A stretch of DNA of 63,754 nt, counting the filler, from Ministeria vibrans ATCC 50519 (Eukaryota > Protista > Filasterea), in the NCBI GenBank assembly GCA_943704425.1. It is 14 parts of 14 records of this genome, joined end to end, with 100 filler letters (N's around TTAATTAATTAA, not from the genome) between each part and the next. Parts side by side here need not be neighbours in the genome. Positions count along the whole stretch, not along the records: positions 4,123 to 5,514 come from CALSCP010000714.1; 13 more parts are not named here. One strand, written 5' to 3'. A model generated the notes under the pieces. The model ran no database searches, was not told the DNA's origin, and worked only from the letters and a program-made list of their open reading frames with translations. A program made the translations under genes and the position numbers. Shown piece by piece: positions 4,123 through 5,514 of this stretch (position 1 is its first letter; each line of letters begins with the position of its first letter).

Positions 4123-5514
4123 GAATTGACACCGTCAACACAGGTGCCACCGCTAAAGCACGGGTTGGAGGCGCACTCGTTGTTGTTGGTGGCACAAGCG
4201 GTGCCCGAGAAACCTGGCACACAAATGCAAGAGTAGCCGTTGATTGAATCTTGGCAAGTGCCTCCATTTCGACAGGGATTCGACGCGCACTCGTCTACGT
4301 TCGTTTGACATAGATTCCCCGTAAAGCCAGTCACACAAGAGCAGGTAAAGCGATTGAGGATGTCGTTGCAAGTACCAGCATTCTGGCAAGGGCAAGATTG
4401 ACACTCGTCAATGTCTGTCTGGCACTCCGTGCCAGTGTAGCCTGGCACACAAGTACACATGTAGGAGCCAACGTTGTTGGAGCAGGCCGCGCCGTTACGA
4501 CATGGGTTCGAGGCACACTCGTTGATGTCGGTTTGACACTGTGTGCCGGTGTAGCCCGTGACGCAACTGCAGGTAAATTTGCCCGAGAGATTGGCACAGG
4601 TGCCGCCGTTGAAACAAGGACGGGAATCACACTCGTTGATGTCGGTCTGGCACTGTGTGCCGGTGTAGCCTGTGACGCAAGTGCATTGAAATTTGTTCAC
4701 TTGGTCGACACATGTACCAGCATTCTGACACGGGTTGGACGCACACTCGTTGACGTTAGTTTGACACAGAGTGCCTGTGTAGCCTGCGACACACGAACAC
4801 AAGAAACTGTTGACTCCGTCACGGCAAGTGGCACCGTTGTGACAGGGATTGGAGGCGCACTCGTTGATGTTAGTGCTGCACGTGGTTCCGGAGAAGCCCA
4901 GAGCACAGGTGCACACAAAGCTCGCGAGTTTGTCGGTGCAAGTGGCGCCGTTTTGACAGGGATTGGAGGCACACTCGTTGATTTCGGTTTGACAGAGGGA
5001 GCCAGTGTAGCCGGCGGGACAGGCACAACACTCGAGACCCGTCAACTTGATGGTCATGTAAGAGCCTGGGCACACCAAGCTTCCAACCAACGCGCTTGCT
5101 GTTGCCGTAAATGTGAGAGAGTCACTTGTGATCATGGTGTTGATAGTGCTTTGATCGTAGTAGAGCGTTTGCGTGTAGGCTTGGCATTGAATCTCGTTTC
5201 CCGTGTCAAACACATTGGCATGAAACGTGCCTGCAGTAAGAGCTACATACTCTGGGTTAGTCCCTGTCGTCTCACCATCCAAGTCCCCGAGTGCAGTCAA
5301 GGCCAGCTCGGCGCCGCCTGAGCATGAGGTGTAGGCACCAAAGGCAAAAGTGAGTGTGTTCCCCGTGTACAAATTGAAGTTGGGGCCACGGGTGATGGGC
5401 GTTGGATCAGTACACGTTCCGCCATTCTGACACTGGCATGTGGGAAGAATGGCAGTTGAACAAGTGGCGCCCATGTAGGCGCCGACACAGCTGCACACAT
5501 TGGAGCGATACAGG
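4123..5514 (-). CDS. Notch/fibropellin-like EGF-repeat protein fragment: one split EGF with a 127-aa insert, then 7 complete and 1 partial Ca-binding EGFs
   Basis: Open frame across the contig with repeated [D/N]INECASNPCQNGxTC...CxCxxGYTGxxC units; both ends truncated. Confidence 0.92.

What the first reader, a model, noticed from the sequence alone, without database searches (positions are those of the whole stretch)
5025..5432. Split EGF: a ~127-aa domain is inserted between Cys3 and Cys4 of an EGF module (copy 1 of a two-gene family)
Seen: CQCQNGGTC is followed by 127 non-EGF residues (5411-5031) and only then by the second half of the EGF, CACPAGYTGSLC. The insert is beta-rich with its own Cys pair (LTALGDLDG...EYVALTAGTFHANVFDTGNEIQC...LTFTATASALVGSLVC...MTIKL). 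A homologous insert sits at the same position in a different gene on another contig (35824-36189), so this is a recurrent architecture, not an accident. Established: the EGF C3-C4 segment is normally a short beta-hairpin. Laminin domain IV is a precedent for a globular domain carried inside an EGF-type (LE) module, but I do not recognise this insert as that family. Inference: the EGF acts as a disulfide-clamped pedestal presenting a ligand-binding beta-sandwich on a Ca-EGF stalk, possibly an undescribed receptor/adhesin family. The GDLxGxxEY...FD...C pattern reminds me of uncharacterised domains in bacterial surface proteins, which is unverified.
Basis: partly seen in the sequence, partly recalled or inferred. 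Interest (0 to 1): 0.85.

Follow-up and report, generated by a model that had tools for sequence, protein, structure and literature searches.

The report
Bacterial-type beta-sandwich nested inside an EGF module
A marine eukaryote's EGF-repeat surface protein carries, inside one EGF module, a folded 115-residue domain otherwise seen only in giant planctomycete surface proteins; this repeats, with an unrelated domain, the way laminin carries its L4 domain, so it is a real but not unprecedented architecture.

Summary
The piece is one open frame on the minus strand (463 codons). A half EGF (C-Q-C-QNGGT-C) is followed by 127 residues plus one extra Cys. The other half (C-A-C-PAGYTGSL-C) and a regular calcium-binding EGF array follow.

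A profile built from the array's own modules matches the two halves at complementary positions (10-20 and 26-38 of 38). They therefore read as one module split in its Cys3-Cys4 hairpin.

The insert is not an intron or a linker. A profile built only from bacterial sequences matches it over its full length (50.5 bits, E 7.6e-18). It belongs to an unnamed ~115-aa domain found once or twice per protein in 1500-2700-aa extracellular proteins, nearly all of Planctomycetota.

With that alignment AlphaFold gives a confident seven-strand beta-sandwich (pLDDT 80-94). Its nearest folds are CBM35/6/36-type jelly rolls (Z up to 7.7, not decisive).

The eukaryotic copy has gained four Cys. A second variant of the locus differs mostly by amino-acid changes within the insert.

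Laminin L4 domains, also CBM35-like, sit between Cys3 and Cys4 of LE modules. This is therefore a new variant of a known design, using a new and probably bacterium-derived domain. Ligand binding is inferred, and the EGF fold itself could not be modelled.

The parts
5460..5513 (-). C-terminal part of the preceding EGF module (aa 1-18, ends V-C-S-C-x8-C); cut by the piece's edge
   Evidence: The own-EGF profile matches positions 26-38 at aa 6-18.
5439..5459 (-). Linker STAILPT (aa 19-25). It lacks the D/N-x-D/N-E calcium motif of the other linkers.
   Evidence: Translation compared with the module alignment.
5412..5438 (-). N-terminal half of the split EGF: C26-Q-C28-QNGGT-C34 (Cys1-3, with an unusual C-x-C start)
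   Evidence: Matches profile positions 10-20 of 38.
5376..5411 (-). N-terminal linker of the insert (aa 35-46, Pro/Thr-rich), modelled with lower confidence
   Evidence: Lies outside the bacterial profile match; pLDDT 55-68.
5043..5375 (-). Beta-sandwich domain (aa 47-157), homologous to an unnamed domain of giant, mainly planctomycete extracellular proteins. Holds Cys64 (5322-5324), Cys110 (5184-5186) and Cys148 (5070-5072), all absent from the bacterial copies.
   Evidence: Bacteria-only HMM: 50.5 bits, E 7.6e-18, profile positions 10-113 of 120. BLASTP to P0003: 2e-11. AlphaFold pLDDT 80-94, seven strands and one short helix. Alignments A1 and A3.
5028..5042 (-). C-terminal connector T-G-L-E-C162. 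The extra Cys abuts EGF Cys4. In the second variant a Gly codon is added between C162 and C163.
   Evidence: three-base insertion behind 5027 in runs X4, X16 and X18.
4992..5027 (-). C-terminal half of the split EGF: C163-A-C165-PAGYTGSL-C174 (Cys4-6)
   Evidence: Matches profile positions 26-38 of 38.
4125..4991 (-). Array of seven complete calcium-binding EGF modules and one cut module (aa 175-463); open at the piece's edge
   Evidence: Pfam EGF 6.9e-59, hEGF 1.1e-41, EGF_CA 4.7e-21; module list.

Best explanation
The piece is an internal part of a large secreted or surface protein of a marine eukaryote, built as a rod of calcium-binding EGF modules. One module, which lacks the calcium motif, is split in its Cys3-Cys4 hairpin by about 128 residues. 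These fold on their own into a jelly-roll beta-sandwich of about 115 aa.

This domain belongs to an unnamed family otherwise found in giant extracellular proteins, nearly all of Planctomycetota. It was most likely acquired from such a bacterium and then nested in the EGF loop. Along the way it gained four Cys, presumably two disulfides, one of them clamping the exit next to EGF Cys4.

Shown: the open frame, the complementary EGF halves, the homology, the confident sandwich model, and the continuity of both junctions in independent assemblies.

Inferred: the two halves close into one EGF (1-3, 2-4, 5-6). The sandwich then projects sideways from an uninterrupted rod, as laminin L4 does from the LE rod, and serves as an exposed binding module for a glycan or a protein. 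The excess of amino-acid differences between the two variants would fit such a role.
For: - Open frame of 463 codons with a regular EGF array.
- The own-module profile matches the N half at positions 10-20 and the C half at 26-38. Joined with a short loop, the two halves give one hit over positions 10-38 at 21.1 bits.
- HMMER against 1.84 billion representatives finds P0003 (E 1.3e-4 library-wide). BLASTP to P0003 gives 2e-11, 34% identity over 113 aa, and also hits its second copy.
- The bacteria-only profile of 24 copies scores 50.5 bits, E 7.6e-18, over the full length.
- The family-invariant residues are kept.
- AlphaFold with 21 sequences gives pLDDT 80-94 over the domain.
- Fold matches are CBM35/6/36, Cry domain III and BcsB, at Z 6-7.7.
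- Contigs of four runs cross both junctions, and no joint skips the insert.
- Two variants occur at about equal depth in one run. All named relatives of the EGF array are eukaryotic.
Against: - The EGF halves were not modelled (pLDDT below 50), so closure into one module rests on sequence pattern and Cys parity only.
- Cys1 is one residue from Cys2, not four as in the neighbouring modules, and the aromatic residue before Cys4 is missing.
- Fold Z-scores lie below the tool's noise line of 8, so 'CBM35-like' is a class, not a family assignment.
- The RNA label of the runs is a guess.
- The near-neutral ratio of 10 nonsynonymous to 4 synonymous differences could equally mean relaxed constraint.
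- No other eukaryotic copy was found, so the direction of transfer is inferred. The tree places the window's copy on a long, unsure branch.
Confidence: 0.7

Rival explanations
1. The sandwich domain sits in line between two degenerate EGF remnants. Each remnant pairs its Cys locally or with the insert's Cys, and the halves do not re-form one EGF, so the rod is interrupted there.
For: The C-x-C start is unusual, the hairpin aromatic is lost and an extra Cys abuts Cys4. With 3+4+3 Cys, other pairings are possible. AlphaFold gave no EGF fold.
Against: The two halves cover complementary, non-overlapping parts of the module profile with nothing duplicated. Each half has an odd number of Cys. The laminin L4 precedent uses the same site.
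Confidence: 0.17
2. The contig is bacterial (for example from an alga-associated planctomycete) and the protein is a bacterial surface protein that happens to carry an EGF array.
For: All detectable relatives of the insert are bacterial and mostly Planctomycetota. The setting is marine and alga-associated. G+C content does not discriminate.
Against: Two variants occur at about 1:1 depth in one run, as expected for a diploid. The stretch is held by species-labelled runs of several studies. Every named relative of the EGF array is eukaryotic, at 44-56% identity. The insert is only about 30% identical to any bacterial copy and has four added Cys. No closer bacterial relative exists among 1.84 billion representatives.
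Confidence: 0.08
3. The insert is an in-frame intron or a retained, non-functional segment.
For: Five in-frame GT..AG pairs can be drawn inside it. The differences between the two variants show no third-position bias.
Against: It is a full-length, in-frame homologue of a protein domain. The frame is open in both variants. No read joint skips it, and contigs of probable RNA runs cross both junctions. The candidate splice sites lack consensus.
Confidence: 0.03

Closest known systems
Laminin L4 (domain IV type A, Pfam Laminin_B) inserted in an LE module; also found in perlecan
   Same: A globular beta-sandwich is inserted between Cys3 and Cys4 of an EGF-type module within a rod of such modules. 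L4 is described as CBM35-like and as sitting peripherally without breaking the disulfide pattern (PMC5338690 and PMC6744579). The host module here also begins C-x-C, like an LE module.
   Different: The host has 6 Cys, not 8. The insert has about 115 aa and 7 strands, against about 180 aa for L4. There is no Laminin_B hit and no L4 or LF chain among the top 50 fold matches. The relatives are bacterial, not metazoan.
Unnamed domain of giant extracellular proteins, nearly all of Planctomycetota (Pirellulaceae, Phycisphaerales), e.g. P0003, P0005-P0019
   Same: Homologous over the full length (50.5 bits), with the same invariant D-L, E, F and S..V positions.
   Different: The bacterial copies lack Cys. 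They lie in line after PPC domains among S8 protease, RTX, PKD and lectin modules, and are not nested in another domain. Identity is only 20-34%.
CBM35 / CBM6 / CBM36 carbohydrate-binding modules (galactose-binding-domain-like jelly rolls), Cry toxin domain III, BcsB carbohydrate-binding domain
   Same: Best structural matches: about 100-118 residues aligned at 2.8-3.5 A, Z 6-7.7.
   Different: No sequence match. Z lies under the tool's noise line. Sugar- or calcium-binding residues were not examined.
Fibropellin / Notch-type calcium-binding EGF arrays
   Same: The flanking array is a textbook cbEGF array, 44-56% identical to metazoan fibropellin-like proteins.
   Different: None of those is known to me to carry a domain inside a module. 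The organism here appears to be a marine microbial eukaryote or alga, and its name is coded by the tools.

Membership tests
EGF-like domain (PF00008/hEGF): the split module | Six Cys with C2-x5-C3 and C4-x-C5-x8-C6 spacing and the G-Y/F-x-G motif | tested here: met
   The N half matches profile positions 10-20 and the C half 26-38. The joined halves give one hit at 21.1 bits. The Cys1-Cys2 spacing is atypical (C-x-C).
EGF-like domain: the split module | 1-3, 2-4, 5-6 disulfides and the EGF fold formed across the insert | tested here: inconclusive
   AlphaFold left both halves below pLDDT 50, because no alignment covers them. Disulfides cannot be tested with these tools.
Calcium-binding EGF (PF07645) | D/N-x-D/N-E/Q before Cys1 and D/N..F/Y between Cys3 and Cys4 | tested here: not met
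   The split module is preceded by STAILPT and lacks the aromatic residue. The seven following modules do meet the feature.
Laminin L4-in-LE architecture | Globular domain inserted between Cys3 and Cys4 of the host module | tested here: met
   The feature is defined in PMC5338690.
Laminin L4-in-LE architecture | Host is an 8-Cys LE module | tested here: not met
   After C174 the next Cys (C181) is Cys1 of a regular cbEGF with its calcium motif.
Laminin L4 (Pfam Laminin_B) | Sequence match to the family profile | tested here: not met
   No Laminin_B hit at E up to 1. No L4 or LF chain among the listed fold matches.
Unnamed planctomycete-type extracellular beta-domain | Full-length match to a profile built without the window's sequence | tested here: met
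   50.5 bits, E 7.6e-18, profile positions 10-113 of 120. This corresponds to about 1e-8 if scaled to 1.84e9 proteins.
CBM35/CBM6-type carbohydrate-binding module | Jelly-roll fold with significant structural similarity | tested here: inconclusive
   Foldseek best E 1.5e-3; VIA Z 6.1-7.7, below the stated noise line of 8.
CBM35/CBM6-type carbohydrate-binding module | Carbohydrate binding | not testable with these tools
   Needs a binding assay.
RCC1-like repeats | Repeat match beyond compositional or multi-stretch inflation | tested here: not met
   P0001, P0002 and P0004 matched only insert aa 17-81, through 4-10 weak stretches. They are not hit by the family profile, and the model is a sandwich, not a propeller blade.

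The most novel reading that the evidence does not exclude
A marine protist captured a surface-protein domain from a planctomycete and nested it in the Cys3-Cys4 hairpin of an EGF module. In doing so it independently re-invented the laminin L4-in-LE design. The nested domain would be a fast-evolving recognition surface of a new eukaryotic adhesion or receptor family, possibly one that mediates contact with bacteria or other cells.
Probability: 0.3. Interest if true: 0.65.

Novelty: new variant of a known kind. Interest (0 to 1): 0.5.

Why it matters
The finding gives a second, independent example of a jelly-roll domain carried inside the Cys3-Cys4 loop of an EGF-type module, outside animals and with an unrelated domain. 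This suggests that the loop is a generally permissive docking site for a nested domain on a rigid rod.

It also defines a previously unnamed domain family of about 115 aa. The family is shared between giant, mainly planctomycete surface proteins and a marine eukaryote, and is a candidate case of bacterium-to-eukaryote domain transfer followed by Cys stabilisation.

The function of laminin L4 is still unknown (PMC5338690). A simpler microbial analogue could therefore be a tractable model for what such side-mounted domains do.

Tried and rejected
- Single-sequence AlphaFold of aa 21-178 failed (pLDDT 36).
- The insert and bacterial copies have no credible Pfam hit (the only matches are far below the family cut-offs), and none was found in NCBIfam, PDB sequences (best E 0.43) or the ESM Atlas (scores 0.80-0.87, lead only).
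- The RCC1-like hits P0001, P0002 and P0004 were rejected as repeat-inflated partial matches.
- A word-indexed search of the insert within the 463-aa fragment found nothing among proteins of 255-810 aa.
- A JGI metagenome scan with the insert found 88 pattern matches, none confirmed.
- The mixed alignment was too diverse for locus scans.
- The intron reading was examined and rejected.
- The organism could not be named, because the run labels are coded. A guess at a diatom was not supported by anything tested, so it is not claimed.

Full report
**1. What is in the sequence**

The piece 4123-5514 is open throughout on the minus strand. window:4123-5513:- translates to 463 residues without a stop and runs off both edges. 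Pfam finds EGF (6.9e-59, 8 stretches), hEGF and EGF_CA over most of it, and nothing credible in residues 35-161.

The order along the protein is as follows.
- The end of an EGF module (aa 1-18).
- A linker, STAILPT.
- C26-Q-C28-QNGGT-C34.
- 127 residues, T35-E161 (window 5411-5031).
- C162, C163, A, C165, PAGYTGSL, C174.
- Seven complete calcium-binding EGF modules and one cut module.

Two adjacent Cys follow the insert, so the insert side has four Cys (64, 110, 148, 162) and not a single pair.

**2. Are the two halves one EGF?**

I built a 38-position profile from the seven regular modules of the same protein and scored the first 180 residues. The N half matches positions 10-20 (the residue before Cys2 through the Asp after Cys3). 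The C half matches positions 26-38 (the residue before Cys4 through Cys6). Nothing is duplicated, and only the tip of the Cys3-Cys4 hairpin (positions 21-25) is missing. When the insert is removed in silico, leaving a short loop, the halves give a single hit over positions 10-38 at 21.1 bits.

Each half has three Cys, so neither can be self-contained. This supports a split module.

Three features are atypical. Cys1 is one residue from Cys2 (C-x-C, as in laminin-type LE modules). The calcium motif before Cys1 is absent. The aromatic residue before Cys4 is lost.

The fold itself could not be verified. In the AlphaFold model the EGF parts stayed below pLDDT 50, because the alignment covers only the insert.

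**3. What the insert is**

A HMMER search of the insert against 1.84 billion representative proteins gave four hits. Three are RCC1-repeat proteins matched through many weak stretches over insert aa 17-81. They are not recovered by the family profile, and I reject them.

The fourth, P0003, is a 1678-aa bacterial protein with PPC and lamin-tail domains. It aligns over 113 residues at 34% identity (BLASTP 2e-11) and has a second copy that also aligns.

Searching with that region found 16 more proteins of 1138-2673 aa. Together they hold 24 full-length copies of the domain, one or two per protein.

A profile built from those 24 bacterial copies alone matches the window's protein at aa 47-157 with 50.5 bits, E 7.6e-18, covering profile positions 10-113 of 120. 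The invariant positions of the family are kept: the D-L pair after the second strand, the Glu that follows, a Phe, and the S..V motif.

Genome scans name the carriers as Pirellulaceae and other Planctomycetota, plus one Kiloniellales genome. One protein is labelled Phycisphaerales. These proteins carry the planctomycete extracellular signal motif, S8 subtilase, PPC, RTX, PKD, legume-lectin, CopC and dockerin modules, so they are giant secreted or surface proteins.

No Pfam, NCBIfam or PDB sequence match covers the domain. The family is unnamed.

**4. Fold**

Without an alignment AlphaFold failed (pLDDT 36). With 20 bacterial copies aligned to the window's sequence (A4), the domain is modelled at pLDDT 80-94 with seven strands and one short helix.

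Foldseek finds nothing below E 1e-3. Its best rows are CBM35, Cry toxin domain III and CUB. VIA-align, run against 48,161 representative chains and again on Foldseek's top 1000, gives Z 6-7.7 over about 100-118 residues. The matches are a GH115 C-terminal domain, the BcsB carbohydrate-binding domain, Cry domain III, and many CBM35, CBM6 and CBM36 modules.

These values lie under the tool's stated noise line of 8. I therefore call the fold a jelly-roll sandwich of the CBM35/galactose-binding-like class, without claiming family membership.

**5. Exon, not intron, and not an assembly artefact**

The full-length, in-frame homology to a protein family is the strongest argument. Several other observations agree.
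- The insert frame is open, while the other five frames hold 2-11 stops, and GC3 is the same as in the EGF part (0.61 against 0.63).
- Contigs from four public runs cross both junctions. In X7 they cover 4836-5111 and 5117-5507; in X4, 4986-5108 and 5188-5514; in X16, 4836-5117; in X18, 4836-5074.
- No joint skips the insert.
- X7 and X18 are guessed to be RNA and X16 is filed as metatranscriptomic, but these labels are not certain.
- Five in-frame GT..AG pairs can be drawn inside the insert. None has consensus sites or read support.

**6. Source**

The tools code the organism names. The stretch is held by species-labelled runs of several studies and, in part, by algae and seawater metagenomes.

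In run X4, two variants cover the same ranges at near-equal depth (376 against 394; 355 of 691). A diploid eukaryote would show this. All named relatives of the EGF array are eukaryotic, mostly fibropellin- or Notch-like, at 44-56% identity. I take the source to be a marine eukaryote, and a bacterial origin of the contig keeps about 8%.

**7. Variation**

Against the second variant, the insert shows 10 nonsynonymous and 4 synonymous differences, with local divergence of 4-7%. The adjoining EGF modules show 1 and 4. The frame, every Cys and the family-invariant residues are kept. A Gly codon is added between C162 and C163, which fits C162 belonging to the insert and C163 being EGF Cys4. Most changes fall in predicted loops, with a cluster around Cys148. 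This may reflect diversifying selection on an exposed surface or relaxed constraint; the numbers are too small to decide.

**8. Origin of the domain**

No other eukaryotic copy was found in any library, whereas the bacterial copies are diverse. In a maximum-likelihood tree of 21 copies, a fully supported split (100/100) sets the three N-terminal copies of the L009-L011 proteins apart from the rest, and the window's copy falls with the rest. There it groups with the second copies of those same proteins and the copy of the Phycisphaerales-labelled protein, at 88/82 support. However, it sits on a long branch (1.73) with deviant composition, so the placement is unsure. Transfer from bacterium to eukaryote is the more economical reading but is not shown.

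**9. Comparison with what is known**

[quoted passage not shown] Their function is unknown (PMC5338690, PMC6744579).

The present case uses the same site and probably the same fold class, and its host module even starts C-x-C. It differs in three ways: the host has six Cys, the insert is smaller, and it is unrelated to L4 by sequence. It works like L4-in-LE but is not a member of that family.

**10. Verdict**

The feature is real. It is a new variant of a known architecture, built with a new and unnamed domain family shared with planctomycete surface proteins. The mechanism is a side-mounted, disulfide-stabilised binding module on an EGF rod. The architecture part is well supported, and the binding function is inferred.

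Noticed in passing
window 4125-4991 (minus strand, aa 175-463): Almost every cbEGF module carries the Notch-type consensus motifs C1-x-S-x-P-C2 (CASNPC, O-glucose) and C2-x4-T-C3 (O-fucose), together with the Asx-hydroxylation and calcium motifs. The split module keeps the C2-x4-T-C3 motif. This is read from the sequence against textbook consensus and was not tested.
   Followed up: no
window 4392-4394 (aa C374, module aa 371-402): One otherwise regular EGF module has a seventh Cys (C-Q-S-C-P-C). This leaves an unpaired Cys that could form an intermolecular bond.
   Followed up: no
window 5028-5222, second variant seen in runs X4, X16, X18: A second allele or young paralogue differs by 4-7% within the insert, mostly through amino-acid changes, and has an added Gly codon between C162 and C163. 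The flanking EGF modules are nearly identical between the two.
   Followed up: partly
L001:3001-8037, L004:101-7903, L009:101-8029 and other bacterial loci: The unnamed domain occurs once or twice in 1500-2700-aa extracellular proteins, nearly all planctomycete. Where it was mapped (P0003) it lies some 60-70 aa after a PPC domain. The N-terminal copies of L009, L010 and L011 form a distinct subtype (100/100 support). One carrier is a Kiloniellales (Alphaproteobacteria) genome.
   Followed up: partly
whole piece, run X4: Dozens of other contigs match short stretches of the EGF array at 90-95% identity. The source genome therefore appears to hold a large family of closely similar EGF-repeat genes, which also explains the many spurious 'joints' in the read table.
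   Followed up: no
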